Source: Iphione sp. A-MEVVRFRX5
Taxonomy: Eukaryota
Direction of reading: 5' to 3'
DNA: 64,000 nucleotides
Assembly: GCA_976226885.1 (NCBI GenBank)
Contig: OZ320319.1
Location: 59,582,001 to 59,646,000 of the forward strand
Under the pieces are notes generated by a model that was not told the origin of the DNA, did not search any database, and was given only the letters and a program-made list of their open reading frames with translations. Below, in pieces: positions 1 to 50,600 of this stretch (position 1 is its first letter; each line of letters opens with the position of its first letter). Position numbers and translations under genes: made by a program.

Positions 1-249
1 AAAAATCGATAATAGAGACCCTAGTTGGAGGAGAGGTGGAGTAATATCGCTTTCATTGAGATAATTAGACTATCAAGGAACGTAAGGGAGGATTGTGCCT
101 AAATAGTACGGGACAAAGAGGACAGGAGACAGGAGGAGAGAAAGTAGGAAAGAGAGAGTATTAAAGGGAGACGGGATAGAAGTACTGCTTGAAGGATACA
201 GGTATATGAGGGCGCCTAAAAGCAGCAATGGGAAAGGAAACAGGAGGTG

Positions 250-600
250 TCACTTGCTGAAGGAGGCAGAAATCGGGTGCCAACACACTACCAACATTAT
301 TGACATTTGTTTAAATCGCAGGGCCTTAGTGTCAGTACAGATTCAAGTGTACGGATGGCAAGGTCGGTGGACTCTTTACTGCACCTGCTTCTGCGTGCCT
401 CTGCATGTACATATTATACTAGTCTATTTCGCCGAACATTCCATGGTAATCTAATTAGATTTAGGGTACTGCATTCCGATATCACACGCGGAGTGACGAT
501 TATAAGAAATGTTCCAGTTAATGTTGGTTGTGATCCCTAAAGCTACAATGACTCAAACATTACCCTCTTTTAAATATAAAGGAATATTCCATAATTGTCC
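250..600 (-). mobile_element. Decayed non-LTR (CR1/L2-like) RT fragment
   Basis: Broken frame NRLV*Y...KESTDLAI...CDLNKC, resembling RT motifs STELA.. and DLSKAFD. Confidence 0.4.
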
Positions 601-1654
601 TCCGGATTTCCTCTTCGAGGCGCCCACCTGGTTGCGTCCCTGACTCTCCTCTTCATGTGCCTGCCCTACCATTCACGCTTACCGGCCTTCCTCACCAACT
701 TGCTGTCCTATTCTCTCTCATCGTTCGCTAAATATCTTTCCTACCCTGACCCTCTAACATGCCTTTTTCTCTCCCGTCTCGCGCAAGCTTTCCGCCTCTC
801 CGTTCGCTCGAACTATCAGTTTATAGCCCACTATGACCATTCTTGTGCCACGAGGGGCTGAATAGATAATACCTTGAACAAGCATGGCTCGTTCTGGTGA
901 TACTTGACTATATAGAGGATGAAAAACGTTCTGCATACATGTATTTGACATCTTGAATGTGCGCGGAAACGGTATCTTTTTAACTTTGACAAACACGGGA
1001 TAAACTGCAGCTTACTTTTCTACAGTTTACCTTTTCTCTCACATTAACCTATTGAACTATCGTCTGCATATGAGGCGGTCCGTACTACTTTTTAATTTAT
1101 TTATACTGAATGCCCCCCCCCCAAAAACCTTTCCTATTTCAATGCTATAGGCCCAAGCCGCATATCCTTCTGTTTGCTTTCTTACAAAGCTACCAGATCA
1201 CACGTAACTGACATTTTATCACAGGTGTTAAATCTGCCAACCTGGGCTTGGCTGTGACATCGCTCCGCCCTCCATCCTCGTTAATCCCGCGGGACGTTGG
1301 CCCGTGCCCGTTACTTCCGGTTGAATCATCGACGATGGCGAATACGCCGGAAGGGAGGGTTGGCCGCCGTCAGCTGGCGGTCTTTGGCGAATACGGCCGG
1401 GGACTGTCAATTCAACAGCTGTATCAGTGGTATGAGAAGGGTTCGGACCAGGAGCAAGGTGGTGGCCGTACCCCTGGCCGCGTCGGCCGTGAGTAGGGTC
1501 GGAGGGGCCCGGTAGGCCCTGGTTGGGACTGGGAATGCGGCCGGTGCCGGGGTCGGAAGGGCTGTGGCTACGCAAGGAAGCATCGGGCCGTCGGCCTGCC
1601 GTCGCTGCATGCCGCCCTCCTCGCCCGTCGGCCGGTTGCAGTCGCTGCTGCCTC

Positions 1655-1745
1655 TGCCCTTGTCGCTGCTGCTGCTGCTGCTGCTGCTTTTGCCACCGCT
1701 GTTCTTGCTGCTGTTGCTGCTGCTGCTGCCGCTGCTGCCGCCGAG
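1655..1745. repeat. Imperfect (CTG/CAG)n trinucleotide tract
   Basis: GCTGCTGCTGCTG runs at about 1666-1687 and 1705-1740. Confidence 0.9.
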
Positions 1746-3559
1746 GCTGGGAGCAGGCAGAACCCTCCCCTACCTGCCGGGAGCGGTGCTGGTGCTGTGG
1801 TCTCCGCCGAGCCTCCTGCCCTGAGCGGCGGTCCCCGGTGAAGCGACTGTGAATAAATTCCACCACTTCCTCCATGATATCCGTAGCTAGGACACCAGCC
1901 CTTCTCTCCACCATCCTCCTGGCCCTCCCCTTCCCTCTTTGCCTCCTCCTCCTCCCCCTCCTCTTCCTCCACCTTCTCCCACTATAGTCTCCAGCACTAT
2001 GTCTGTCTGTGTAGGTCTATGTGTTCGGCTCACCCGTTGAGTCCTCCTCCTTCTGATACTACTACTTCCCCTCCACCACCAACACCACCACCACCACCTC
2101 CTCCTGTGTGTTTCTCCAGGTAAAGGGACTGTGCAGTGACTGTCGCCATCACTGCCTCTACCTCTACCATCACTGACTCCCTCTGCCTCTCTCCGCACGC
2201 CTCCGCACACAGCCACCCCATGCACACAATACCGGCCGATCCAGCTCAACTCAACTCATCGAAGGGCATCCCTCCAGCATAACGCACACTAGAAGATACT
2301 CTCGTCCTAATTTGAGTCCTGTTCCCGATGCATGTATTTCCATGCGCACATTTTCGCCGACTGCATGAAGCAGGATTACATGTACGATTTTTGGTAAGCT
2401 AATGCTAGATTGATCAAATAATGGTCATTTGTGAGGTAATTCCTCCTGTTAAAACTTGAGGTATCTTGGCAATGGATGAAATGAATAGATCTTGATTAAC
2501 ATTTTACTATTCAGAGCACACCATTTTAGCTACCGTCTATGCGAGTCGGAGCTTTTTTTAATATTTTGACGGGGGTCACCTCACTGACTGTTTGGGCTAA
2601 ATACAGATTAGACCATATCTGGCGTTGTCATCGAATTAAACCGTGTTCAATATGACAATAAAATGCAATAGAAGTCCATCAACTACAAGATAGTGGATGG
2701 GTTTGTCTCATTGTCGCATTACGGTTACCAGTACGTCACGAAGAAGTGCCCCCCTAGTCTAGAATACATTGATCCTTAAATTCAATACCGCCTAGTCATA
2801 TGAAACCGTTGCTGGTTGATTCTTGTATTAAACAACAAAGATCGGCAGATTAAGGTGTATCCATAGCATGATTTGCTGCGAGTAAAAGCATGTAATATGT
2901 GCTAATTTTGAAAAATGAAACAGTAGAAGTGACGTTCCAAAGACCCAGCCAGTTGATTTCCTGTCAAGGTTCCTACGGAGTCCGCCAGAAGTACATGATA
3001 CCAAATCTACAACGGATATCAACACAGATTTAAGTGCAGAGGGTAATTTACTATCCCGCAAATGAGGACCAGAGAAACTGATGTAATCCTAAATTTATGA
3101 CAGCTTGTTTCGGTGTCAGGGGAACCAATGAGTCAAGGGAACAAAATGGCCGTCTCAACAAGGTCAACCGCCCGAACTTCGAACTGGACATCACTGGGAA
3201 ACGTATGCAGTGATCAGTACAACAGCGTTGTGCGAGTTGTCATGCCCATGTAGCTTATGCCCAGGCCTAAGTCTCAGGTAGCGGTATATGTGCCGGGTAG
3301 ATTTTGACAGGTCCGCGCCCTCCGTCCTCCTCCTGTCGCCCAACCACCCATCCTCCGGGCAGACTTATTTCCTGTGGCAGCAGAACATTGCGTTCAAAGC
3401 CATTGAAACGTCAATGTTAGCTGCCCCCGTGGGCATCCTTCTAATATCGCCCAAGTACCAAGTGCCGTATTGTTGCTCAGGCCCAGGTTTCTGTTTTGGA
3501 CAGGATCATCTCTCTCCCTCAGATTCTCCTACCAGTCCAGGTTTCCCTTTCCTGTTCAA

Positions 3560-32600: not shown

Positions 32601-35600
32601 AAGAGTTTTTCGCCTTTACAGTATAATCCCCTGAGTCGTCATTCTGCGCTTCTCTGATGAATAATTTGCAAAGTCCTTCCTTCGAGTCATGTGAAATGTC
32701 AATTCTAGAATCAGATTTCTCCGGTTTGATACGCCTTCCAGCTTTGTACCATGTTACCTGTGGCGCTGGGTCGCCTAAAGTAGAAGACCATACACTGTTA
32801 ATATAGTACAACTGTTGGTTATGCTTCAACAAATTCTCCCAGTTTAAACGCTATTCAGCCTTCAGAGTAACGGTATGATGTTGATGTGAATCGTTGCCAT
32901 ATACCATACACAACTAGCGCTAAAACGACATGTTCTCTTCCGATCTCACGGAGAAAAATACGAATACATGTATCTCTAAAATACATGATTTACTCTAATA
33001 TATGTGCCCTGTACATATGCACTATACTGTCACAAACGCAGATCTACTAAGCTAGGATATCTCGATATCTCTAAATGTCTAAGTTCTAAGTCTAGGACTA
33101 GATAATACTTTCAATAACTAGTCTATAGTTATCTCTGTATCTATCTACGATTGTTTTAAGACGTCTGACCTTTGACCTGGCAGTTGATCTCGATAACCCC
33201 ACCGACATCCACATGAACTGGTTCTGGGGGTACGACGAAGTGTGGTGGCCTGCCTTCATATGTACCAGCAGCCAAGCCCTCCTCCTCACGAGGAACAGCC
33301 ATGTCCTGTGCAGTTGAAGTATAGAGAGTTTCAGGCCTGCTATCCCCAGTTATCTCTTGAATATTCACACTGGCCTCTTCTGTATTGCCCCTTTCTGTTG
33401 GTTCTTCAGTGACCTCACTTTTTACTGTTCTCTCAACAACTTTTCCATCCACTAATGTCTCCTCCACTACAGATACGGACCGTTTGGTCGTGACTGTCTT
33501 GAGAACTTTTCGCTCGACAGACGTCTCCTTGTCGGCCTTAGACTCAGCAACAATAACTGTTATTCTGAATTTGAAGGCGCCATGTTCATTCATTGCTAGA
33601 GCCATATATTCGCCTGAGTCATCAGTATTAGCGTCACTGATGATGAGTATGTGGAGGTCCTTCTCTGAATCACATATGATGTTTATTCGAGTATCGTCAT
33701 CGGGTATGATAAGGATGTCATCTTTATACCATTCGACTTCAGGCACGGGATCACCTAAACATTATACAGATAGAGAGGAAAGGGTTATCATATTGTTGTT
33801 CCTGCAGGAATTTCTATGAGTTAAATGATTTATCATTGTAAATTGCTAAAAAAATGGTCGAAATGGTCTACCTGAGCATTGTAGAACTAAATTAATGATT
33901 AGGCTTTAATATCTTAGCACAAACAAAGGAAGGCAATACAGAAATGAAATGTTGAACAACTATGAACGTGACTAAACCAAGATATCATGGTCAGGGTCAG
34001 ATAATAGAAACAGTAACTGAGACTGCAGGATTTTAATCCGAATAGCAGGATATAATCAATGTTGAGATTCTCGCAACTGTGTAATTCCTAGCTTAAACAT
34101 AGGTAAAGTAGAACTGAAATGATGAACAGGGAATTAAAGGAGCAATTTAAGAAATAATAGGCCGGACGTCAAATCATTATCCGAAGCTGTAAGAGATCTA
34201 AAAATATCGGGTTTGTTAATTAGTACATATCTATGAAAGATAGCATGTTAAAGAAGACAGCAGGGGAGGGGGGTACATGGAGTCCAACCTGAAACTTTGC
34301 AGGTGAGTCGGACTGTTCCGCCAACGTCTACCAATGCTGGTTCCGGAGGCTCTACAAACTTGGGTGGGTTTCCCCGCTCTTCCAAAGTTACTGTGCCACC
34401 TGCTTCCTCCACTACAAGTGATCGTTCCTCGGTGGCCTCTGGCTGTTGAAAGGTCTCCTTTGTATCTGTGCTCATTACATGCACTGAACTGATAACATCT
34501 GATGGTTCTAGCGATGCTGTAACTGACTTCAACGAGGTATCAATTTCTGTAGAGGCCAATTCTTTAGCCATTGGCTTTTCTCCAACATCAGCTTGCTTGT
34601 TTTGTGCAGCCTCAGTTAATACTTCTGCTTTGACTGTTTCCGTGAGTTGCGTCCTGTCTCTTGTCACCGGCGTGGTCTCCACAACACTCGTATCACCACC
34701 AACGATTGCAAACTTCACAGTCTCAGCAGACTCGGGTTTACCGACAAGAACAGTCACAGTGAACTTGAAACTGCCATACTTGTTTCTTGCCAAAACCGTA
34801 TATTTCCCAGCATCTTCAATGTTGGCATTAGTGATGACCAGGCTATGAACGTCTCGTTCCTTATCATAGTAAATAGAGGTGCGTGAATCTTGGCCAATAG
34901 GATTTCGTTTTGTGTCCTCCTTAAACCAACTGACTTCTGGAGTTGGTTTACCTGAAGAGTGTCATCACATAAGAACTAGGTAAGTTCCAATAATATGTAG
35001 CAGAAGCAGGAAATGTATTAAAATGAGGGTTTTCCCAGTTGACAAGAGAATATAGTGATGATATCCTTATAATTTAGGACAAAAAGTTTAAACTATGGTT
35101 TAATTCAAATCGATGGGTAGAATATAGCATGTCCCATCAGCAAACTCCACTGAAAACAACATGTCCAATATTAAAAGCTGGATGTCGAAGGACATGATAG
35201 ATAAATACACGGAATATTCTTAACATATGCTGAAGTGATTGACAAATAGAAGCATTTTCTGGACCTGTAAATAGAAGATTGTGGTAATTAGGAATTCAAT
35301 AGCAAGTTAAATCATTGATTCTCTACTAAAAATCAAAACGGCAATTTTATTTGAATTAAAGAAAGAAACATGGAAACCATATAGGTAGTGGAAGACTTTC
35401 GAGACTTGTTATTGTTTAGATGTTAATGCAGCTGTTTAACATTTCAAATTCATGAATAAATACCAAAACATAAGCTCGATGAAGGAATGCATTACAACGA
35501 AAACACGGTCATCACATGAGTCACAATATCGAAACCGAAAGAGATTACAGTTGAAACCGCCCGGTCTTCTGACAACGTCGAATACCAAGCAAACCAGTTG

Positions 35601-38600
35601 GACAAGAATGGAAGCACATGCAAACATATATGAAGCCATATAAAGTACCACGCCTTACGCAATAAATGTAAATACACAGAATAAACAAGCTAATTTACCA
35701 GCTTAACTGGACAGATTCTTCTATAAGAGAAAGTTCTTCTCTTGCCCAGACATTGTCTAGAGCATCTCACACGCACTCCAATGGATATTCAGCACTTCAA
35801 AGAAGGACTCCTTGGTTGAAGAGTCTAAGATCACCTTTGATCCGTTCTGTAAAATCTTCTCAAATTAAGGAAAAAAACAATGACGAGAATTATCCCTTTT
35901 CCTCTACACTAATAGATGCTTCAAGAGAAAGTTTTCCTTTTTTGGATGATGTGAAAAGTATTCCAGCAGAATCAAAGCAACAGCCTCTATTGCCTTTATT
36001 ACAAGTTCTGAATCTTTCTGTCCCTGTGTTTGTGTCGATGGGTCTGCAGTCCTCCGCTTTTGAATTACTGCCTATTAACTATCGCCCCTTTATCCACGTG
36101 GAGTGTGCTTCTTTCAGTAGTTTGCTGAACAATGTGAGATCCTTCTCACTTCCAAACTGTGACAATTATAGCAAGTTTAACATCCCGTGTGTGCTCTATG
36201 TAAACATGATGTAATCCCCATCACCACAATGGTGTTAATTGATAGTCTTCTTTGACATACAGTTTCGCACAACTGTCGTCTTTGCAGTTACAGTATCTTT
36301 AAATTAGCTTTGTCCTGGACAAGTTACAAATAAAGTGGTAAGACGGAGAGTCAAGACAAAAGACAGAAAGGGATCATAGTATTATGAAAAGTTTCCAATT
36401 CTTACTAACGTCTAATGCTGCCCAGATAAAAAAAAGGTATGATCAAACAAGATTTGGTGGCTCACTTTTTTGTATTCACAATTTTATGACCTTTTTATTG
36501 TCGTGAAATTGTGAAATTGGCTCTCTTCTAATGGTGTGGACTTCCTGATTATTTTCTGGGAAATTTTCTATATTTCAGTGATTTTCTCACCTTACCAAAG
36601 CATTTGTCGCTTTCTGGAATAAGAGTAATTCCCCTATTCAAGGAGCGCACATCTGACTGACTTATAACTGCTTGAGGACACAAGGAGGAAATGTAATGAA
36701 ATGACGTCAGTTACAGTTACTTAACAAGGACAAGAGGACGGTAGAGACCTTGCCTTTTGACTGCATCTAGGATTAAATTCTTTTTCCTACGTAAAATTTT
36801 GTTCTTATGTCTCTGATTGTAACTATGAAATTCCCTATGGAGATCATGTCCAGTAAAGGCACATATAGCATGGAGTTATTATAGAAAAGGAACAAAGATT
36901 TCTACAGGGTAGACCTTAAAATATATATATTTATAATTTGATATATTCTCTATCATTTTTCCTTCCTTAAGCAAGATTACCTAAAAACAATAACTATAAT
37001 GCTAAGAAAGGAATTTCTAACTACTAAAGAAAACTCCCACTTCACAATGGCTTATATAATCAGTACAAAGTAAAAACGTATTTCAAGGTGTCCTCGAAAT
37101 GAACTGATCGCCAGCTGCGAAAGAAACGGGCAGTGTGTACGTCACTTTAATGAATTTGTGACATTGCCGCAATTCTCAGTGATTTGATTGGACGATTCTC
37201 AATAAAACGTCACAATTTGTAAAAGTGAAGTGCGCACTATCCATTTCTTTTGCCACCAGCGATCGGTCTATACAATCAATGGAAAAAGCAAGTATTGCGA
37301 AGCAGGAGCATTGGAAGAGAAAGCATACCAATCCTAGCCAAATGAACTTAAGTTATCCAAGGCACTTTCTGTTGACAATCTTAAATGAACAATAACAAGT
37401 GCTCCCTATACGTATAATCATTGGAACCAATCAGTTCAGAAAGGTAATAATGCATAAATAAACAAAAGAGATTTCAGGAGAAAACAAATGATGCTAGCCA
37501 GAACGTGCAATATAACCTGAAGTAGCCTGACAGCCAAGTAAGTATGAAATGTCTCAAACAAATCCAAGTTATAAATTCTATGAAATTAAAAAGACCTTTC
37601 ATCTCGACCACATTCTCATTAGCAACAGAGCTTAGTCTAACCTGAGACTTTGCATGCCAGTTTGATAGTTTCACCAACATCAACCACAAGAGCTTCTGGA
37701 GCTTGTACAAAGTGAGATGCCTCTCCTATCTCTTCATCTGATGATTTTTCTGATGGTTTTTCACTAGAGGATTTTTTTAAAGAAGACTCCTCAGTAGATG
37801 ATAGAATGTGCTTCTTTGTTGCTTCATCTTCAACTTTTTCTACCTCAGATTCTTTTTCCCTGGACATAGGGATATCTTCAGGTTTCTCAATAAGAGTTAC
37901 ATCCTGAGTAGAAGATGCTTGTTCTATCTCTATAGCTGTTATGTGGAGTATATCAGTTTCAGAACTGACTATCTCTGTGATTTCTACAATATCATCAATT
38001 TGTTTCTCAACTTTTGTTGAGTCTACAATCATAGATGGTTCTTTTAATTTGTGTTCTAAAACTCTCTCCTGAGTCGAATCATCAGTGACAGTCAAACCTT
38101 CAGTTTCTAATGTCTGAATACTATCAACATCAACTGTTTCCTTTTCAGCTACTTTGATTGAACTCTTGGACTTCACAGTCTTCTGCATAAGTTCTGTTTC
38201 TGTAGTGTCTTTAACAATAACAGTCACTGTAAATTTGAAGCTTCCATATGTGTTCTCAGCAATCACTGTATAATCACCAGCATCTTCTAGTATTGCATCC
38301 AATATAATGAGAGTATGTAGTTTGTTTTTTATCAAAGTGTGGATAAATATGTTTGCTTTCCTAAGATGCCTGAATTCTTTTCCCAGTCTTATGCCAGGTA
38401 ATGCTTGGTGTTGGAATTCCTACATTATTAAAAGAATTATGCAGTAAATTGCCTTCCTAAACCTTTTAAGTATATTCTACTGACAAAATAGTACTTAAAA
38501 GATTCTATCATATAAATATACTGTGTATTGAGAATGTTTGTCCGTATTAAAATAAACAGGTGGTAAGAATACTTGTACGTTATCCAAGAATATATAGCTT

Positions 38601-41600
38601 TCAATATATTTCCAACTTTCCAAGCCCAACAAAGCAACTATAATATATTAACACGATTAGTGACTGCTATTGAATCCATACAATAAAATCCAAAACAGAG
38701 CCATGAAAAATAAAGACTAAAACTGAGAGCAAACTGCCGGATCAATGAATGAGCTGGACTGTGACAAAACCTAATATAATTGAAATCTTAGGAGACAGGC
38801 TTGAATATGCTATATTCAGTTAACCATCAATGCAAGTAAGAGAATTGCTCCATATTTGAAACAAGTTCTATTTACGGCCCAACACTAAAATTTTGATATA
38901 AGCTTTCTTACATATATCATACATAATTTAGCATGCCATGTGAAGAGAAATGATCCAAATAAGACAATAAGCGATGATAGAAAGTTACATCACCAAATGA
39001 AAAAGTGAAAAAGGCAATACACAAAAGCTTGAAATCAGGCCAAATTATCAACAGCAATAGTTTAAATCTAACCTGAAACTTTGCATGTCAACTTGATAGT
39101 TTCACCAACATCAACCACAACAGCTTCTGGAGCTTGTGCAAACTTAGGTGCCTCTCCTTTCTCCTCAGCAGATGACTCTTCTGATGATGATTCTTCACTG
39201 GAGGATTCTTCTGAAGAAGACGCCTCACTAGATGATAGCATAGGTTCATTTGCTGTTTTGTCTACAACCTTTTCCATCTTAGATTCTTTTCCTCTGGATT
39301 TAGGTATATCATCAGCCTTTACAACAGGAGTTACATCCTGAGTGGTAGAAGCTTGTTCTGTCTCTATGGTTGTCACATATAGTGTATCAGTTTCAGTACT
39401 CACCACCTCTGTAACTTTCACTATAATATCTTCTTCTTTCTCATCCTTTGTTAAGTCTACAATCATAACTGGCTCTTTTGTTTTGTACTCTGTAGGTCTT
39501 TCCTTTACAAAATCATCAGTGACAGTCAAACCTTCAGTGACTGATGTCTGAATGGTATCAAAATCTAATGCTTTCTTTTCTTCTACTTCAGTTGATCTTT
39601 CAGACTCAGTGGTCCTTCTCCTTTCTTCAGTCTCTTTAGAATCTCCTACAAAGACAGTGACTGTAAATTTGAAGCTTCCACATTTGTTCTCAGCAACTAC
39701 TGTGTAAACACCAGCATCTTCTAGCTTTGCATCTAATATGATGAGGATATGTAAGCCTTGTCTTTTATCAAAGTGTGGATTAATACGTTTGCTCTCCTTC
39801 GATGTCTGAATTCTTTGCCCAGACTTATGCCAGGTTACACTTGGTGATGGAATTCCTACAATATGGTTATGAGAAATTGAAAATAATAATCCTCCTTAGA
39901 CCTCCTAAATCTATCACACTTATAAAAAGTAAACATTTTGCTTTTTCTCTATCATTTAAATTTTCTCTATATCTTTAAACGTATGTCATTAAAAAATAAA
40001 CAGCAGAAAAGAGCAAAGTTGAGATTTAGGGTAAAGGTTATATGTTTAAATACATATGTTTCCTCCTCTCTAAAGTTCAACAAAACAAGTTCAGTACATC
40101 TAGTTAGTTACTTCCTGATCAATTCTATGAAATCCGAAACTGAACAATAATGAAAAGCATAACACTGAAAACAAACCATCATATCAATGAAATAAGCCGG
40201 AATATAATAAAACCTAATGAAACAAAAGTCTCAGAGAATACACTTCAATATGCTGTAATAAATCAAATATCAATAAATGTGGGTGAATTGCTACTCCTTT
40301 GTAATTAGTCCTTTTCAGGACCTAAAACTCCAACCTAGGTATATGCTTCATAATAGATATTAAATGAAACAAATTAACATGCATATGAAGTAAAAATAAT
40401 ATAAATAAGACAATAAGCAATGATACAACAATCAAATAACAAAGCCAAAAAGATGATATACAAAAGATAGCAAATGAGGCTGAATTCTCATAAACAGCAG
40501 TTTGAATCTAACCTGAAACTTTGCATGTCAGCTTGATAGTTTCACCAACATCAACCACAACGGCCTCTGGAGCTTGCATAAACATAGGTGCCTCTCCTTT
40601 CTCCTCATCAGATGACTCTTCTGATGATGAATCTTCGCTAGAGGATTCTTCTGAAGAAGACTCCTCACTAGATGATAGAATAGGCTTCTTTGCTGCTTTA
40701 TCTTTAACCTTTTCTATCTTAGATTCTTTTCCTTTTGATTTAGGTATATCATCAGGTTTTATGACAAGAGTTACATCTTGAGTGGTAGATGCTTGGTCTG
40801 TAACCACAGTTGTCACATAAAGTGTATTACTTTCAGTGCTTAATATATCTGTGACTTTTTTTGCAACATCATCTTTTTTCTCTTCTTTTGTTGAGTCTAC
40901 AATCATAACTGACTCATTTGTTTTGTGTTCTAAAACTCTGTCTTTGGTCAAATCATCAGTGGCAGTCAAACTTTCAGTCACAATTGTCTGAATGGTTTCA
41001 GCATCAACTGTTTTCTCTTTGGTTACCTCACTTGAACCCTTGGTCTCTGTGACCTTTCTCATCTGTTGAGTCTCTTCAGTATCTCTGACAACAAGAGTGA
41101 CTGTAAATTTGAGGCTTCCATATTTGTTCTCAGCAATCACTGTATAATCACCACCATCCTCTGACTTTGCATCCAGTATGATAAGAATATGTAAGTTTTG
41201 TTTTTCATCAAAGTGTGGATTGATATGTTTATCCTTTGCTGCCTCAATCCTGTGTGCATTCTTATGCCAGGTTACTTTTGGTGCTGGAATTCCTAAAATG
41301 TTGTGAGAAGAAATATGAAATAGTTACTGTTCTTTTACTGACGTCCTTCTCAATTTAATTAGGTTCACGTAGTAATGAAAAAAATTTAACTCCTATTTTT
41401 GGTATTCAAAACTCGTATAGCTTAAACGTTGTCCTTCATGAAAGGAACTATTGGTAATCAGTTTTGAAATAAGATTCTGAACTTCTTAAGTAGAAAATAA
41501 ATATTTCCTATACTCCCTTTGATTCAACAAAGCCACATGGAATGGGCAAAAATATTCTTCGGGAAACCTACTTTATAACTATTTGTATGAACTATTCACC

Positions 41601-44600
41601 CTGACCGGTCAAAGAGCAAATTTTAACTCAAAGAAAACTGTCATGATAATGAAATCAGGCTAAAAATAAAGAACTACTAGAATAAAACTCTTAAGACGCT
41701 GAACCACAGAACATTCAATCATCACCGAAAATGGGGGAAATCTGCTCCTTTCAAAGAAAACCTAGGAACTTCTATGTGAAACTGTCACATAAGACCCAAT
41801 ACCATACGAACTTCTGACAACACAACATGCTACATGAACAGGATAAACAAACATAGCAACAGAGACTCTTAATGAAGCGTTGTAACAATGTCACTTTTCT
41901 TTAGCATTACATTAAAGTCTAACCTGAAACTGTGATAGTTTCACCATCATCCACAATGGCTTCTTGAACTTGCACCAACTTTGGCGCCTCTCCTTTCTTC
42001 TCATCAGATGATTTTTCTAATGATGATTCCTTATTAGAGGACTCCTCTGAAGAAGTCTCCTAACTACATGATAGAATAGCCTTCTTTAATGTTTTGTCTT
42101 CAGCCTTTCTTTTTTAGATTCCTTTTCACTAGATTTATGTATATCATCAGCTCTTACAATGAGTTACATCCTGAGTAATTGATGCTTGTTCTCCCTCTAT
42201 AGCTGTTATATGAACTCTATCAGTTTGAGTACATATACTTACTACCTCTGTAACTCTAACAGGATCCTCGTCTCCTTTCTCAGCCTTTGGTGAGTCCACA
42301 ATCATTACTTGCTCTTTCGTATTCTGTTTTAAAACTCTGTCCTGAACCAAATCTTCAGTGACAGTCCAACCTTCAATTTCTAATGTCTGAATGGTTTCAA
42401 TATGACCTCTTTCCTCTTCAACTACCTCTTTTGAGTTGTTAGATTCTGTAGTCTATCTGCAAGTTCTATCTGTTTAGTACCTCTAACAAAGATAGTTACA
42501 GCAAATTTGATGCTTCCATGTTTGTTTCGGTAACCACTCTGTAGTCACCATCATCTTCTACCTTTGTTTCCAATATAAATATATAGATATTATTTTTATC
42601 AAAGTGTGGATTAATATATTTGCTTTCCCAAAATGTCTGTATTCTTTGCCCTGTCTTAGGACAGGTTACACCTGGTGATGGAATTCCTACAATATGGTCA
42701 GAATAAGTATAAAATAATTACCTGTTATGTCATAAGAAAAGTAATGAACATGAAATACGAAAAGTAGTTTGAAAGAGTTCGAATTATATATTTGTCTGTA
42801 CTTGCCGTCCTTACAAGGTTCTTAACACTGCTCCTGTGATCCTAAATAAAGTAGATTAGTCCTCGCTACACTATTGTGGTTAATACTGATGTAACTCAAG
42901 CAAACATAAAGTAATTTAATTTAAACGCAAACTTTGACACCAATTAATTCAGTTAAAATTCAAATAAACTAACGTAAAATTAATCTGAAGGAATAAGGTC
43001 AACTGCCCTGAATTAAATCAATAATTATTGCATTGAAGTAAAATCTTTTCCTTAGGAGAAATATGATCTTGTACATCCGATGCCAAAACCTAACGACCTG
43101 GCAGGGATAAAGGGTTTTTCATATACATGTACTTCCATGAGGTATAGTGGAGTGTTAACCTAGGAAGAGAGTCAGATATCTTATAGCTGAATAAAGGATA
43201 AATTGATCGGCTAAAAACCAATTTAAGCTATGCATTAGTTGAATAAAGGAAAAGGAGAGTAATTTAAGATACTTCTTGGTTTAAGTCAGAATGAACTACT
43301 CTGGAAAAAGTCGGTTTCAGATACCTTTTGACCCAGTTTAAAAAACACGAAAAATGGGAATAGAATGAGAGGTAAAACCGAAGAGAGGAAGAGAGGAGTG
43401 GCAGAGGCAGAGGGACGGGGGGAAGAATGATGAGAGAGGAAGGAGGACGAAGCAGGATGAATTTCTTGGCTAAAAACCATTCCAGATATTTCTCGGTTGA
43501 ATAAAGAAGCCCTGATCAATAAAAAAAAAAATTCCAGATACTTCTTTATTTTACTAAGTTTAAACTACTCCAGCAAATTCCAATGTCACATATCTTTCGG
43601 CCTACTTTATGAAGCAGAAAGATGGGGCTAGGACAAGGGGTGGAGGCAATAAGAAGGGTAAGGATGGAAGGATTAAGGCGTAGGAGTGAAGGAGGAGAGG
43701 GAAGAGTACAAAATGGAGGAGGTGCATTTCTGAATGAATTTGTAGCAGTCTGTATTTTCATAAACAGGAGAATGCATCAGGTAGGGAAACCTTTGGCTCT
43801 CCCCTAAATTGCTCATAAGGAGATGTGTCAATATGAGTAACTTACTGTAATGTCCAGAAAATATAACCTGTTCTTGCCTAAACATGCCATAATTATCCCG
43901 TTTAGTAACGAGCGTTGTTGCTATTGTTTCATTACCTGTTATTACAGAAATCTTGACCAAATACTAATTCTCCATATTCTGTGGACTAAACCCTCGGTAA
44001 GGTATATGGGACTATCTTTAGGGTTCAGCGGTTGTTATACCACTTATCACTTCTAAATATGAGTATTGTTATCACGATCACCTTGACCACTGCAACATTT
44101 GATATCAAAAGAAATAATCTAAATGAGAAAATGAACAATAACAGAACTTAACACATACAAAAAAAAGAATAAAGACAACTCACTAAAGCATTGAGTCACG
44201 CCCAAGTCTCAAAACAGCAGTCTGAATCTAACCTGAAACTTTGCATGTCAACTTGATAGTTTCACCAACATCAACCACAATCGCTTCTGGAACTTGCACA
44301 AACTTAGGTGCCTCTCCTTTCTCCTCATCTGATGACTCTTCTGATGATGATTCTTCACTGGAAGATTCTTCTAATGAAGATCCTTCACTAGATGATAGAA
44401 TAGGCTTCTTTGCTGCTTTATCTTCAACTTTTTCTATCTTAGATTCTTTTCCTCCAGGTTTGAGTATATCATCAGCTTTTACAACCAGAGTTACATCCTG
44501 AGTGGTAGATGCTTGTTCTGTCTCTACATTTGTCACATGTAGTGTATCAGTTTCAGTACTAACTACATCTGTGACTTTAAAAGAAACACCTTCTGCCTCA

Positions 44601-47600
44601 TCTTTTGTTGAGTCTATAATCATGACTGGCTCTTCTATTTTGTGTTCTAAAACTCTGTCTTGAGTTAAAGCTGTAGTAAAAGCCAAACTTTCAGTCACCA
44701 ATGTCTGAATGGTTTCAGCATCAGTTGTTTTCTCCTCAATTACCTTACTTGAACTCGTGGTCTCTGTGATCTTTTTCATATGTTCGGTCTCATCAGTATC
44801 TCTGACAACAACTGTGACTGTAAATTTGAAGCTTCCATATTTGTTCTCAGCAATCACTGTATAATCACCAGCATCCTCTGACTTTGCTTCTAATATGGCC
44901 AAGATATGTTTATTCTGCTTTTGGTCAAAGTGTAGATCAATGCCTTTGCTCTCCTTGGATGCCTGAATCCTTTGCCCAGTCTTATGCCAGGTAACACTTG
45001 GTGAAGGATTTCCTACAATACATGGTTATATGAATCATTCAAGAGATACATTCTTTTTACATATTTCCTGACAAGCAAACCGTGTTTGAAACATATAGAT
45101 CAAAATCCACGTATTTGAGTTATCTTCAATTAATATTTATCTGTACTATTATATATTTATACAAGAAAATCAGGATGACAAGAAGTTCTTAACAAAGTTA
45201 GGTTTTCAAGACGGTATAAAGGATCAGTTGTACAAAATCAATTCAGACTTGCTATCTATTTACTGCCATAAAACAGACAACTGATCCAAATGAAAGCAAG
45301 ATGTAACTCAAAAGAAACTCTCATATCCACAAAATTAGGTGACAACTACATGTGGCTGTTTGCTGAGCAGCTTTACCGCTGCATTCATGACGGCCTATGA
45401 ATATCTATCCTCTGGCCGCAGAATTAAACGCATACATGCAGTTATTACAGGCAATCATCAAGGGCCTTCTATAATATGCTGTGACAATTTGTCCACCTAA
45501 ATAACCATGGACAGTCATTTCTAACAGGCTGTGAGCACCTTCACATCAAGGTACTTTCTGAGGACCTTCTTCAACAGGGTGGGAGCACATTCCTTCCAAA
45601 GCAGCAACCAATAGTCATCTACATCTAAAGATGAAAAACTCCAGGCGCCAACAGGAATCAACACGGGAAATAATCAAAAGAGTATTGAAAAAAGGAAACC
45701 AATCACAGAAAAAGGATTGATACCAACAATCATGGCCTGCTGTATAAACTATTCCATGGCTTCTAATTTGCGCAGGCTTTCAGGAGGAAGCCAAGAAACA
45801 TAACTTCTGAAGTAAGAAACTTTATCGCACTTAACTGGATCAACAATCAATTAAAGTGAGTAAAAACGCTCTCTTAGAGAAACATATGATGAATGCCTAA
45901 TGTGAAACCTTAGAAGATGTGTCAATATCAAGATCGCATCTAGCAATTCAACATGCAACATAATGAGAAATATTGCAACAAACCCAATGAAATAATATAA
46001 ATCAAATCACAAAATAAGTGACACAAGTGCAACATAATATAATTCTGATCTAAGCCCAGTTCTCACTGGTAACAAATTTGAATCTAACCTGAAACTTCGC
46101 ATGTCAACTTGATAGTTTCACCAACATCAACCACAATGGCTTCTGGAACTTGAACAAACTTAGGTGCCTCTCCTTTGTCTTCATCAGATGACTCTTCTGA
46201 AGATGATTCTTCACTGGAAGATTCTTCTAAAGAAGATTCTTTACTAAAGGATAGAATAGGCTTCTTGACTGCTTTATCTTCAACTTTTTCTATCTTAGAT
46301 TCTTTTCCTCCAGGTTTGAGTATATCATCAGCTTTTACAACCAGAGTTACATCCTGAGTGGTAGATGCTTGTTCTGTCTCTACATTTGTCACATGTAGTG
46401 TATCAGTTTCAGTACTAACTACATCTGTGACTTTAAAAGAAACACCTTCTGCCTCATCTTTTGTTGAGTCTATAATCATGACTGGCTCTTCTATTTTGTG
46501 TTCTAAAACTCTGTCTTGAGTTAAAGCTGTAGTAAAAGCCAAACTTTCAGTCACCAATGTCTGAATGGTTTCAGCATCAGTTGCTTTCTCCTCAATTACC
46601 TTACTTGAACTCGTGGTCTCTGTGATCTTTTTCATATGTTCGGTCTCATCAGTATCTCTGACAACAACTGTGACTGTAAATTTGGGGCTTCCATATTTGT
46701 TCTTGGCAACCACTGTGTAATCGCCAGCATCCTTGAGGGTTGCCACCAGTATGATGAGACTATGTAAGTCTTGTTCGTTATCAAAGACTTGCTTTATACG
46801 CTTTGCATCTGTGGATGTTTTGATTTGTATTCCCTTTGTGTGCCAGGTGACAATAGGTGAAGGAATTCCTAAAATATATATCAATTATGAATTTTAAGAG
46901 AGCGATCCCTTTTATTTTCAACATATCTTTATATCAATATTACAGAAAATGCGTTGCCTAAATAGATACTCCTTTCCTTTATCTATTATTGTATGTATTC
47001 ATGTTTCATCTGATAAAAGTAAGTAACATTTACTAATGCACTTAAGGGCGTAAATTTAATCACTGAAAGAAAGACAATACTGGAATGAAATTAAAACATC
47101 AAATTCCAAGCAAACTGGTGATCAAGCAGGTGTTAATAACATTGATCAGAGAACTCCATACATTTATCGGACTCACTGAAGCAATACGCACTGAGCTACT
47201 GAAACCACTTGAACTGAAAACACCGTAAAGATCAACAACCACATTTATGGACACTATACCTATGAACACTGTCAGACAATAACATTTGATTGACACAGAC
47301 ATGACTATCAAGACATCACTAATGTTCCAATTAAGTCAAGGCACAAATTGAACTACTGCATCAAACAGATTTATGTAGAACAACGTGACCAAATAGAAAA
47401 TGAGCCATTCCAAAACAATCAAGTCCACAGAAAGCACAACTGCAAAATCTCCAGAAAGATCGACCAAACCTTTCACTTTGCAGGTAAGTGTAATAGTGCC
47501 TCCAACATCAACCACAGTAGGTTCTGGAGTCTGTGTAAATTTGGGCGGTTCTCCTTCCTCACTTTCGCTGGATGACTCCTCTTCACTGGAAGATTCGTCC

Positions 47601-50600
47601 TCACTGGATGATTCCTCAGAGGAAGATTTCTCACTCAATGGCCGAGTTTTTAGTTCCTTGCTATCCTCTTTAATTATAACTGTCTGTATTTCACTAACAT
47701 CTGTCTGATCTTCGGTTGTGATAGTCTTAACGTCTTGGATATCTGTGACAGCAAACCCTGAAGTTTCTTCCAACATCACTTCAGCAGCTGTGTGTTCAAC
47801 TTTATCTGGAACAATTGCAGTGAAACTAACTTCTTCTTTCCCTTCCTTTACCTCTGGTGCATCTTCAGAAACCTCCTTCACTGTCCGATCAACAACTTTC
47901 CCATCTACAAGAGTCTCCTCAATGACTTGAGTGGTACGTTTGCTTTCAACAGTCTTTGTTATTATCTCAGCACCCTCGGGCTTACCGACAAGGACAGTAA
48001 TGGTGTACTTGAATCTTCCAAATTTGTTCTCAGCAATAACTCTGTATTCTCCAGCATCATCCGTGGTAGCATCAAGTATAGTTAAGATATAAAGGTTCTG
48101 ACCTTGATCGTAGTGGGGAACCACACGCTTGTTATCCTTAGTTGCTTTAATTGGTTTATCAGATTTATACCAGGTAACTTCAGGGGAAGGCACACCTAAA
48201 ATGTCATTAATATGAAAAAATATTATTGCATCAATCTAAGCTCTTGCTTTTTGGTTCCATATTAGTTTAGGATAAAGATAATACTTGTACAATTATCTAC
48301 GAAAGGAATTTCATTTAATATACATATACATGAAAAAATGTACCAGCAGCGTCGGTCAAACGTGATAATACTGATGTCACACAGAAAACGAAGCATTCCG
48401 AAAAAAATAAATCCAAAACATATGCTATGAAAAATGAAGTAAAATCAAACTTCTCAAAAGCAAAACTTCTACAAAAAAAGGATCTAGACCTGGTACTACT
48501 GAAGAAATGAAGTAAAACGAATGAGCTACAAAAAAGACCAAAGATAGAATGTTCGACCTTGTTTGAAATATAAAGCCAAAACATATAAACCAACGTTGAG
48601 GCCATTCCATAAATCATGTTGCCAACCAATAACTGTAGAAATATCACACCTGTAACTTTGCAGGTTAGGGTTATTGTCTCCCCAATATCCACAAGAACTG
48701 GTTCTGGAGGCTGTGAAAACTTGGGGGGCTCTCCTGTTTCATCGTCGCTCTCCTCCACTGATGATGACTCTTCACTTGATGATTCTTCAGGAGATGAGGT
48801 AACAACCTTCTTCTTTTGGGTAACTTCAGCAACCTTTTTCTCAACCATATCTTCTTTCTGCACCGTAACATCTTTTGAAACTCCCCCAATTATCATGACA
48901 TCTTCAGGAGTTTCACTCACTTCGGAGAGAATGGTAAAAGTCACCTCGGAATCTGCTGTAACATCTTTGGGTTTGGTATATCTTTGCTCGACAGTTTCCT
49001 CAGTGGGTACATCATCCGAAACCTCTTCCTCAATAACTCTTTGAATAACATTCCCATCAACAACAACCTCCTCCACGACTTTCTTGGTTCTCTTGCTTTC
49101 CACAGTTTTCTTGATTAACTCTACTCCTTCAGGTTTACCGACCAAAACAGTTACTGTGAATTTGAAACTACCACAAGTATTCTCTGCAACAACTGTATAG
49201 TCAGCTGCATCGTCCGATGTTGCATCCAAGATTACTAGTATGTGAAGATTTTGTCGCTGGTCATAATGTGGTTTAATACGAGGTTCATCATCCTTGGCCA
49301 CTAATGGTGTCCCAGCTTTAAACCATGTCACCTTCGGGGTTGGTTCACCTAAATGGGCGGCATTATATTATGTGAAAAGGCTGATATTTATATTCATAAA
49401 TATAATCATTTGTTATTTGGATTTGGATTATTCAAATGATTTTTTGCCTTTATACAAAATATTACACTGCATAGGAAAAATATCCAATTATCCTCCGGGG
49501 TAATGATATAACAATTTATAAACGGAGGAGCATTTCTACTGATTGATACGAACATTTTTTTCGACATATCATGAGACACAGTAAGTGATGCAGCTTTAGC
49601 AATGAAAATAATAGAACACAACATAATCAGTGAGTGTTACAAATAACGGCAAAATTCTCACAGGGGGCTGAGAGTTGGCCCCTTTCTTCCTGGAATAAAA
49701 CATGATTAGCGTCTCATGCATGATATGAGCAGCGAAAAAGAAGAGAAAGAAACAAGATGTGTCTGAAATGAATACGGAATACAAAAGCCATTTCACATAT
49801 TGCTAAGAAGCAGGGGGTTTGAACATTGAAGTAAGGGTGACTCTCTCTTTGCCAACCTGTGACTTGGCAGGTCAGTTTGATGGTCTCGCCAACGTCTACC
49901 AGTACTGGTTCCGGAGGCTGGGTGAACTTTGGTGCCTGGCCTTCACTGCTCTCCTCCATTACAACAGTCGATTTCACATCCGGAGTGACCATACTGTCAG
50001 CAACTGTTACTTTTGTCACCTGGGCAGAATCTTCTTGTGATACATCAGTTTTCACTCTCACCACATCTGAGGCACTGCTTTCGGCAGTGACTGTCTTTGA
50101 GAAGGATTGTTCTGTTGCTTCTCCAATCTCTCCTGACTCACCAAGAGTTAATACAAATGCTGACTCAATATCTTCTTTGGCTTTACCAGATACAGCCTCA
50201 ATAATGGAGAGGCTTTCTGCAGTTTGCTGATCACCTACAGTCATCTGCATGTGAACATCAGCATCTGATTTACTAACTACAGCAGCCTCTTGTTCTTTCA
50301 TTGTTGTTTCAGTGGGCTCTTGTGTGGTCATGATAGTCTCTGAAGTGATGGCTTTTACAGTTTCGATATCACCAGTTATTACCTCTTTTTCTGTCACTGT
50401 TTCAGAAGTAGTACTTTCAGCAGTGACTGTCTTTGAGTAGGATTGTTCTGTTGCTTCTCCAATCTCTCCTGACTCACCAAGAGTTAATACAAATGCTGAC
50501 TCAATATCCTCTTTTGTTTTGCCAGATACAGGCTCAATAATTGAGAGGCTTTCTGTAGTTTGCTGATCACCTACAGTCATCTGCATTTGAACATTAGCAT

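What the first reader, a model, noticed from the sequence alone, without database searches (positions are those of the whole stretch)
37642..46868. Young six-copy tandem exon array undergoing birth-and-death
Seen: six homologous exons of about 780 nt, all with donor GTTAGA, start at 37642, 39073, 40513, 41924, 44233 and 46089. The base period is about 1.41-1.44 kb; the two longer gaps contain LINE remnants. Intron sequence is also homologous between units (e.g. AATAAGACAATAAGC near 38960 and 40405), so exon plus intron were duplicated together. Four copies are open and two are broken. Inference: this is an evolving variable cluster like Dscam or myosin mutually exclusive exon arrays.
Basis: partly seen in the sequence, partly recalled or inferred. 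Interest (0 to 1): 0.7.

Follow-up and report, generated by a model that had tools for sequence, protein, structure and literature searches.

The report
Duplicated Ig-spacer exons in titin-like gene
Six tandem copies of one exon (four intact, two decayed) are a local expansion inside a giant muscle-type protein gene built from about 26 such exons, so they most likely lengthen the protein chain rather than act as a Dscam-like pick-one switch.

Summary
Six homologous minus-strand exons of 763-783 nt all keep the donor CAG|GTTAGA at the stated coordinates. U2, U3, U5 and U6 are open; U1 and U4 are broken.

Two details fail:
- "LINE remnants" in the long gaps found no support.
- "Young" is overstated. 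Copies are 72-84% identical with dS 0.3-0.5. Only a 416-nt gene-conversion patch between U5 and U6 is near-identical.

The Dscam/myosin-style mutually exclusive reading is not supported. The whole window is one giant titin/obscurin-like gene made of about 26 serial "split-Ig" exons. Each encodes the last two thirds of an I-set Ig domain, an acidic disordered spacer, and the first third of the next Ig domain. All are in phase 1-1. The six copies are one clade within that series, and the neighbouring exons are homologous too.

The enforcing features that I know from mutually exclusive clusters were each looked for and not found:
- Introns are long (631-1546 nt).
- All splice sites are ordinary GT-AG.
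- Intact exon lengths are multiples of three.
- No docking/selector complementarity was detected.

The intact copies are under purifying selection (dN/dS 0.34-0.56). The best reading is tandem module amplification with birth-and-death, as in obscurin and titin.

No RNA data could be obtained, so the splicing pattern itself is untested. An earlier first-reader note of this scan (s1-334843) covers the whole exon series.

The parts
46089..46868 (-). U6: intact 780-nt exon, phase 1-1. Its first ~184 nt (Ig C-terminal part) are an older, divergent sequence.
   Evidence: Open frame; acceptor TTTTAG|GA, donor CAG|GTTAGA.
46269..46684 (-). Gene-conversion tract in U6. Its partner in U5 is 44413-44828. 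There is 1 difference in 416 nt.
   Evidence: Exon positions 185-600 are near-identical. Flanks are ~60% identical (5' side and intron) and 92% identical (last 180 nt).
44233..45012 (-). U5: intact 780-nt exon, phase 1-1.
41924..42686 (-). U4: pseudo-exon, 763 nt. It has 8 stops, several indels and a 12-nt deletion in Ig strand B. Splice sites are retained.
40513..41292 (-). U3: intact 780-nt exon, phase 1-1.
39073..39855 (-). U2: intact 783-nt exon, phase 1-1.
   Evidence: open frame of 275 aa, no stops.
37642..38419 (-). U1: pseudo-exon, 778 nt. It has an in-frame TAG about 20 codons in and a 2-nt deletion. Splice sites are retained.
39856..40512 (-). Intron U3->U2, co-duplicated with intron U2->U1 (38420-39072).
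   Evidence: 69.3% identity over 629 nt, JC distance 0.395, close to dS of U2-U3 (0.33).
42687..44232 (-). Intron U5->U4 with a ~900-nt insertion of unknown origin. No LINE evidence.
45013..46088 (-). Intron U6->U5 with a ~430-nt insertion of unknown origin. No LINE evidence.
46869..47469 (-). Intron U7->U6. It is not homologous to the array's introns and marks the 5' edge of the duplicated block.
   Evidence: z about 0.
34952..37641 (-). Intron from U1 to the next unit (exon 34289-34951). It is not homologous to the array's introns and marks the 3' edge of the block.
47470..48195 (-). U7: older unit of the same design (726 nt, donor GTTTGG).
48650..49348 (-). U8: older unit of the same design (699 nt, donor GTGTGA).

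Best explanation
The six exons are a local tandem amplification of one module of a giant titin/obscurin-like protein gene on the minus strand, presumably sarcomeric. The gene is built from about 26 serial split-Ig exons in this window and continues beyond it.

Each exon encodes three things in order: strands C-G of one I-set Ig domain, a ~165-residue acidic Ser/Thr/Glu-rich disordered spacer ending in SSEESSSEESSS, and strands A-B of the next Ig domain. All exons are in phase 1-1. Joining any two of them therefore rebuilds an Ig domain and keeps the frame.

Unequal crossing-over, with breakpoints inside the exon, copied a block made of the spacer and Ig N-terminal part, the intron, and the next Ig C-terminal part. 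This happened several times. The intact copies U2, U3, U5 and U6 have since been kept by purifying selection. U1 and U4 decayed. A 416-nt patch was later homogenised between U5 and U6 by gene conversion.

Inferred, not shown: the intact copies are spliced in series. Either all are included or a variable subset is, as with the I-band spring exons of titin and Sallimus. Each adds about 260 residues (one Ig domain plus spacer) to an extensible chain. A productive mRNA must skip U1 and U4.
For: Gene architecture:
- Every unit ends ...CKV.G|GT and the next begins G.P.P.VTW.
- Pfam finds I-set halves at both exon ends.
- The 2041-aa exon holds 10 I-set domains, and its best PDB matches are titin.
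- Fn3+Ig exons lie upstream and more split-Ig units lie downstream of the window.

The six copies as a subfamily:
- U1, U2, U3, U5 and U6 form one clade (support 99/88) within the unit tree. U4 was too broken to include in that tree and is assigned to the family by nucleotide alignment.
- Single-exon ORFs from other genomes pair one-to-one with other units of this gene. None falls in the clade.

Selection:
- dN/dS is 0.34-0.56, and pN<pS by Fisher test with p from 0.003 to 9e-7.
- The unconstrained copy U4 collected 8 stops.

Duplication history:
- Intron JC distance (0.395) is close to dS of U2-U3 (0.33), so whole units were duplicated.
- The flanking introns are not homologous, and U6's Ig C-terminal part is as distant from U2, U3 and U5 as the older unit U8 or a single-exon ORF from another genome (P0001) is. 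This places the block boundaries inside the exon.
- U5 and U6 share a conversion tract.

Spacer:
- It is predicted disordered (pLDDT about 30 for residues 74-230) while the Ig parts fold (pLDDT 73-86).
- Net charge is -14 to -24 and the P+E+V+K fraction is 0.37-0.52.

Precedent:
- OBSCN exons are mostly tandem duplicates with repeated introns (PMC9013439).
- Spring exons of Sallimus and titin are cassette-spliced (PMC12063666).
- A 1172-aa ORF from another genome (P0128) shows the same Ig-linker-Ig chain written continuously, without introns.
Against: There is no transcript evidence of any kind. No sequencing run was listed, so serial inclusion, the skipping of U1 and U4, and even expression are inferred. 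The near-constant length of the intact copies (780 or 783 nt) would also suit interchangeable exons. One 40-nt stretch of the intron upstream of U6 has complementary 10-mers in four of the five inter-copy introns, which is matched by only 1 of 170 control segments.
Confidence: 0.78

Rival explanations
1. This is a mutually exclusive exon cluster. One of U2, U3, U5 or U6 is chosen per transcript. The choice gives alternative hybrid Ig domains and spacers, as in Dscam or myosin heavy chain.
For: The intact copies have the same length (780 or 783 nt) and phase. All donors are identical and the acceptors are similar. All four are under purifying selection. There is a marginal clustering of complementary 10-mers in the intron upstream of U6.
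Against: - The flanking exons U7, U8 and 34289-34951 are homologues of the same design, and the whole gene is a serial repeat.
- Exon lengths are multiples of three, so including two copies is in frame.
- Introns are 631-1546 nt, so steric exclusion is not expected.
- Only GT-AG sites are present.
- Inverted-repeat search gives scattered 16-30-nt pairs with no shared arm.
- The 10-mer matches lie at non-homologous positions in the target introns. Duplex energies of the candidate hub are no better than those of 21 of 40 control segments.
Confidence: 0.07
2. The whole six-copy block is a decaying, normally skipped region. All six are effectively pseudo-exons, and the four open frames are left over from the past.
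For: Two of the six are already broken. All share a donor with T at +3, which I take to be a weak match to the usual consensus. There is no expression evidence.
Against: pN is significantly below pS in all six pairs of intact copies. Four frames of 259-260 codons remain open at dS 0.3-0.5, while U4 acquired 8 stops and several indels. Ig core residues are intact.
Confidence: 0.1
3. The array is an assembly artefact, produced by mis-assembly of a repeat or haplotype.
For: U5 and U6 share 416 nt with a single difference. Read depth could not be checked.
Against: Copies differ by 16-28% and have different introns and different lesions. The identical patch lies inside otherwise diverged units. There is no duplicate of the locus elsewhere in the assembly.
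Confidence: 0.02

Closest known systems
Tandem Ig-exon duplications in giant sarcomeric genes (human OBSCN; the differentially spliced I-band Ig and PEVK exons of titin)
   Same: These are serial homologous Ig-coding exons of symmetric phase. Intron sequence is duplicated along with the exons. Amplification is local and non-functional copies occur. Inclusion adds modules to an extensible chain (PMC9013439; PMC12063666).
   Different: Here the intron sits inside the Ig domain, after strand B. Each exon carries parts of two Ig domains with a long acidic spacer between them. To my knowledge, vertebrate titin and obscurin Ig domains are mostly one exon per domain.
Sallimus/kettin (insect I-band titin) and other invertebrate I-band titins
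   Same: The protein is a chain of I-set Ig domains separated by linkers, with spring-like disordered segments. Spring exons are spliced by muscle type (PMC12063666).
   Different: Orthology is not shown. The best database matches are only about 23% identical and are named unc-89, obscurin, SPEG, MLCK or titin-like. The spacers are Ser/Glu-rich (SSEESSS) rather than classic PEVK. Fn3 exons lie upstream in the same gene.
Dscam exon 4/6/9 and myosin heavy chain mutually exclusive exon clusters
   Same: These are tandem homologous exons of equal length that encode part of an Ig domain (Dscam exons 4 and 6 encode half-domains). They evolve by birth-and-death.
   Different: No docking/selector signal was found. 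Introns are long. Including two copies stays in frame. The flanking exons are homologous to the variants. See the membership test.

Membership tests
Mutually exclusive exon cluster (Dscam-like) | Tandem homologous exons of the same length and phase | tested here: met
   The intact copies are 780, 780, 780 and 783 nt, all in phase 1-1.
Mutually exclusive exon cluster (Dscam-like) | Exactly one variant per mature transcript | not testable with these tools
   No sequencing run was listed, so read laying could not be used. No spliced homologue was found in the protein databases.
Mutually exclusive exon cluster (Dscam-like) | An enforcing mechanism: competing docking/selector RNA pairing | tested here: not met
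   Inverted repeats are scattered with no shared arm. A k-mer hub test was marginal. The matches are non-homologous 10-mers, and duplex energies are no better than controls. Imperfect pairing could still have been missed.
Mutually exclusive exon cluster (Dscam-like) | Alternative enforcing mechanisms: steric hindrance from a very short intron, U2/U12 splice-site incompatibility, or a frameshift with NMD on double inclusion | tested here: not met
   Introns are 631-1546 nt. All sites are GT-AG with the same donor. Exon lengths are divisible by three.
Mutually exclusive exon cluster (Dscam-like) | Variants are flanked by constant exons that are not their homologues | tested here: not met
   U7, U8 and the exon at 34289-34951 have the same design and are homologous.
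Serial tandem-module expansion in a giant Ig-repeat muscle protein (titin/obscurin type) | The gene consists of many serial homologous Ig-coding exons | tested here: met
   About 26 units lie in the window and more lie in both flanks. Pfam finds I-set domains.
Serial tandem-module expansion in a giant Ig-repeat muscle protein (titin/obscurin type) | Symmetric intron phase, so that copy-number change keeps the frame | tested here: met
   The phase is 1-1 throughout, with a split Gly codon at every junction.
Serial tandem-module expansion in a giant Ig-repeat muscle protein (titin/obscurin type) | Exon and intron duplicated as one block | tested here: met
   I3-2 and I2-1 are 69% identical, with a distance close to dS. 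Other introns show partial homology.
Serial tandem-module expansion in a giant Ig-repeat muscle protein (titin/obscurin type) | Copies are maintained by selection as coding sequence | tested here: met
   dN/dS is 0.34-0.56, with Fisher p of 0.003 or lower in all pairs.
Serial tandem-module expansion in a giant Ig-repeat muscle protein (titin/obscurin type) | Copies are included together in one transcript, and the gene is expressed in muscle | not testable with these tools
Orthologue of titin, Sallimus, twitchin or obscurin specifically | Diagnostic domains (kinase, Z-repeats, RhoGEF) and an orthologous sequence relationship | tested here: inconclusive
   Only Ig, spacer and Fn3 were seen within 50 kb of flanks. 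The best named hits are about 23% identical and their names are mixed.

The most novel reading that the evidence does not exclude
The four intact copies are not constitutive. A regulated choice among them, either mutually exclusive or combinatorial cassette splicing, would generate different hybrid Ig domains (strands A-B from one exon, strands C-G from another) and different spring lengths in different muscles. The splice-competent pseudo-exons U1 and U4 would act as poison exons that lower output through NMD.
Probability: 0.1. Interest if true: 0.7.

Novelty: new member of a known kind. Interest (0 to 1): 0.3.

Why it matters
The locus is a clean, datable example of how giant elastic muscle proteins gain and lose modules. 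It shows unequal crossing-over in register with a symmetric intron phase, then selection on some copies, decay of others, and local gene conversion.

It also guards against a common over-reading. Tandem homologous exons inside a repeat protein are not evidence for mutually exclusive splicing.

The broader design is the more unusual aspect. Every Ig domain is split across two exons, so each splice junction assembles a domain. That design is the subject of a separate note of this scan (s1-334843). If the copies turn out to be alternatively spliced, the locus would offer a simple system for studying spring-length tuning in a lophotrochozoan muscle.

Tried and rejected
- RNA evidence: the look-up of sequencing runs listed no run, so read laying was never used.
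The ENA and Logan contigs that encode homologous exons in other genomes could not be fetched, so synteny and copy number in relatives are untested.
- The search for related loci on metagenome contigs found nothing.
- LINE claim: Pfam on all ORFs of 45 aa or more (40 or more in the U6-U5 gap) in the two long gaps, and of 50 aa or more in the intron below U1, found nothing. Own-genome DNA and protein searches returned only self matches. blastn against the window found only a weak internal 170-nt direct repeat.
- Docking/selector search: full-length duplexfold is uninformative, with z near 0. A sliding-window RNAduplex scan timed out. It was replaced by k-mer and local-energy tests with natural-sequence controls.
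- Naming the gene: the profile search returned generic Ig giants named unc-89, hemicentin, obscurin-like and titin-like. P0126 is a generic tandem-Ig protein and not an orthologue.
- Naming the organism: mitochondrial COX1 was found on contig 89 with TGA read as Trp. A search with a stop-free piece gave only unnamed fragments. "Annelid-like worm" comes from earlier notes of this scan only.
- All searches were exon by exon, by reference.
- No seventh decayed copy hides in the long introns.
Full report
**Observation**

The repeat finder shows six register-matched copies between 37.6 and 46.9 kb, and two more diverged copies at 47.5 and 48.6 kb. The coding strand is the minus strand.

All six copies end ...CAG|GTTAGA at 37642, 39073, 40513, 41924, 44233 and 46089. 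All begin after a TAG or TTTAG acceptor followed by GAATTCC or GAAATCC. The exact exons are:
- U1 37642-38419 (778 nt)
- U2 39073-39855 (783 nt)
- U3 40513-41292 (780 nt)
- U4 41924-42686 (763 nt)
- U5 44233-45012 (780 nt)
- U6 46089-46868 (780 nt)

U2, U3, U5 and U6 are open from end to end. U1 has an in-frame TAG about 20 codons after the acceptor, plus a 2-nt deletion. A six-frame search of the whole 1.18-Gb assembly finds this exon family only at this locus. The core observation is therefore correct.

**Points of the observation that do not hold**

The long gaps (42687-44232 and 45013-46088) carry insertions of about 900 and about 430 nt. I found no support for LINE remnants there:
- No ORF has a Pfam match.
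- The stretches match only themselves in the genome, by DNA and by protein search. The tool warns that very common words are skipped.
- They have no other copy in the window.

The array is also not especially young. Exon identities are 72-84% and synonymous distances are 0.3-0.5. The one exception is a patch of 416 nt with a single difference between U5 (44413-44828) and U6 (46269-46684). That patch is embedded in sequence that is about 60% identical on the 5' side and in the intron, and 92% identical in the last 180 nt of the exon. This is a gene-conversion tract, not a fresh duplication.

**What the exons encode**

Each exon translates in three parts:
- About 68 residues that match the C-terminal two thirds of the I-set Ig profile.
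- A spacer of about 165 residues.
- About 27 residues that match the start of the I-set or Ig_3 profile (PKF.Q.PE..VVDVGETIKLTCKVS).

The last base of the exon is the first base of a Gly codon, which the next exon completes. The intron phase is therefore 1-1, and every junction assembles one Ig domain from two exons.

The spacer is acidic (net charge -14 to -24). It is 26-29% Ser+Thr in the six-copy family (21-25% in U7 and U8), poor in hydrophobic residues, and ends in SSEESSSEESSS. AlphaFold2 on the exon alignment gives pLDDT 73-86 for the Ig parts and about 30 for residues 74-230. The spacer is thus predicted disordered.

**Context**

A motif scan of the minus strand shows the same design about 26 times, from about 57 kb down to 8 kb of the window. 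Spacer lengths vary from about 100 to about 700 residues. One 6.1-kb exon holds ten uninterrupted Ig domains.

The flanks show that the gene exceeds 100 kb. Upstream there are Fn3 and Ig exons. Downstream, more split-Ig units are seen in two sampled stretches: one 10 to 20 kb past the window and one 30 to 40 kb past it.

The best solved-structure matches of the Ig-rich exon are titin fragments. Database relatives are only about 23% identical. Their names are mixed: unc-89, obscurin, SPEG-like, MLCK and titin-like. I therefore call the gene titin/obscurin-like without claiming orthology.

Single-exon ORFs from other genomes (ENA and Logan sources) have exactly this exon design. So the intron position inside the Ig domain is conserved beyond this species. 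Earlier notes of this scan call the animal an annelid-like worm. I could only confirm an invertebrate-type mitochondrial code in COX1.

**History of the array**

In a maximum-likelihood tree of 25 units of the window plus eight exons from other genomes, U1, U2, U3, U5 and U6 form one clade (support 99/88). U4 was too broken to include in the tree. It is assigned to the family by nucleotide alignment (72-77% identity to the other copies). Three foreign exons pair one-to-one with other units of this gene, and none falls inside the clade.

A database search with U6 found no closer relative than 47% identity. This suggests, weakly, a lineage-specific expansion.

The introns between U3, U2 and U1 are 69% identical over 629 nt (JC distance 0.395). 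This is close to the synonymous distance of U2-U3 (0.33). Whole units were therefore duplicated, and the introns then drifted neutrally.

The intron upstream of U6 and the intron downstream of U1 share nothing with the internal introns. U6's first ~184 nt are as distant from the other copies as the older unit U8 or a single-exon ORF from another genome (P0001) is. The repeated block therefore starts and ends inside the exon, as expected for unequal crossing-over between neighbouring homologous exons.

The four intact copies are under purifying selection. Overall dN/dS is 0.34-0.56. It is 0.24-0.47 in the Ig C-terminal part and about 0.5-0.6 in the spacer. pN is below pS with Fisher p between 0.003 and 9e-7. 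Birth-and-death is thus supported.

**Serial or mutually exclusive**

No RNA data could be obtained, so this rests on anatomy. The arguments against a Dscam-like switch are:
- The exons flanking the cluster are homologues of the same design, and the whole gene is a serial repeat.
- Intact exon lengths are multiples of three, so including two or more copies stays in frame.
- Introns are 631-1546 nt, too long for steric exclusion.
- All sites are GT-AG with one and the same donor.
- An inverted-repeat search gives only scattered 16-30-nt pairs with no shared arm.

A k-mer test did flag one 40-nt AT-rich stretch of the intron upstream of U6. It has complementary 10-mers in four of the five inter-copy introns, which only 1 of 170 natural control segments matches. 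However, the matches lie at non-homologous places in the target introns. The duplex energies of that stretch are also equalled or beaten by 21 of 40 control segments. I treat this as chance.

For the serial reading there is also precedent:
- OBSCN is largely made of tandemly duplicated exons with repeated introns (PMC9013439).
- Spring exons of titin and Sallimus are cassette-spliced by muscle type (PMC12063666).
- A 1172-aa ORF from another genome writes the same Ig-linker-Ig chain continuously.

**Mechanism, with status**

Shown:
- The module structure, intron phase and duplication block.
- Selection on four copies and decay of two.
- The conversion tract.

Inferred:
- The intact copies are joined in series, all or a subset, each adding one Ig domain plus about 165 residues of acidic disordered spacer to an extensible chain.
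- Productive mRNA skips U1 and U4, whose inclusion would shift the frame (778 and 763 nt) and introduce stops.

Because U1 and U4 keep intact splice sites, some exon skipping at this locus must be tolerated. This makes cassette-type variation plausible.

**Limits**

- No sequencing runs were listed.

**Verdict**

The interpretation as an evolving duplicated cluster is right. The mutually exclusive analogy is unsupported. This is an ordinary, well-preserved case of tandem module expansion in a giant Ig-repeat muscle-type gene. Its moderate interest comes mainly from the unusual split-Ig exon design of the gene as a whole.

Noticed in passing
window 8090-57028 (minus strand), and flanks L004, L006: The whole gene is a chain of about 26 or more exons. 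Each runs from the middle of one Ig domain to the first third of the next, with a phase-1 intron after the CKV.G motif. The same exon design occurs in single-exon ORFs from other genomes (P0001, P0163, P0165, P0166, P0210, P0226).
   Followed up: partly
window, donors listed: Most donors of this gene have T or C at intron position +3 (GTTAG, GTCAG, GTTGG, GTTTG) rather than the usual purine. I did not check whether this is typical of the genome or a mark of weak, skippable exons.
   Followed up: no
window 47471-48193, 48651-49346, and relatives P0001-P0003, P0163, P0165: A conserved motif directly follows each Ig domain in the older units and in other genomes (VLVGKPEGAEI..KT.ESKR..V.EET.VDGKVV.R). 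It is eroded in U1-U6. It may be a binding element rather than a plain linker.
   Followed up: no
window 43195-43358 and 43454-43626: There is a weak internal direct repeat (65% over about 170 nt) inside the ~900-nt insertion of the U5-U4 intron. The region is Pro/Ser-codon-rich low-complexity sequence of unknown origin.
   Followed up: partly
L005 (G000:C15:59646001-59656000), minus strand: Several Fn3-type exons and an Ig exon lie just upstream of the window in the same orientation. The gene therefore mixes A-band-like (Fn3) and I-band-like (Ig-spacer) parts.
   Followed up: partly
L008 (G000:C15:59572001-59582000): This 10-kb stretch just downstream of the window has no recognisable Ig exon, while split-Ig units resume further on (L004, L006). 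It is either a very long intron or a boundary between two genes.
   Followed up: no
window 1-2000: This is a GC-rich stretch (52% against about 40% elsewhere) with overlapping ORFs on both strands, at the low-coordinate edge of the window.
   Followed up: no
G000:C4:89642397-89642808: Short COX1-like fragments lie on a nuclear chromosome, probably a nuclear mitochondrial insertion.
   Followed up: no
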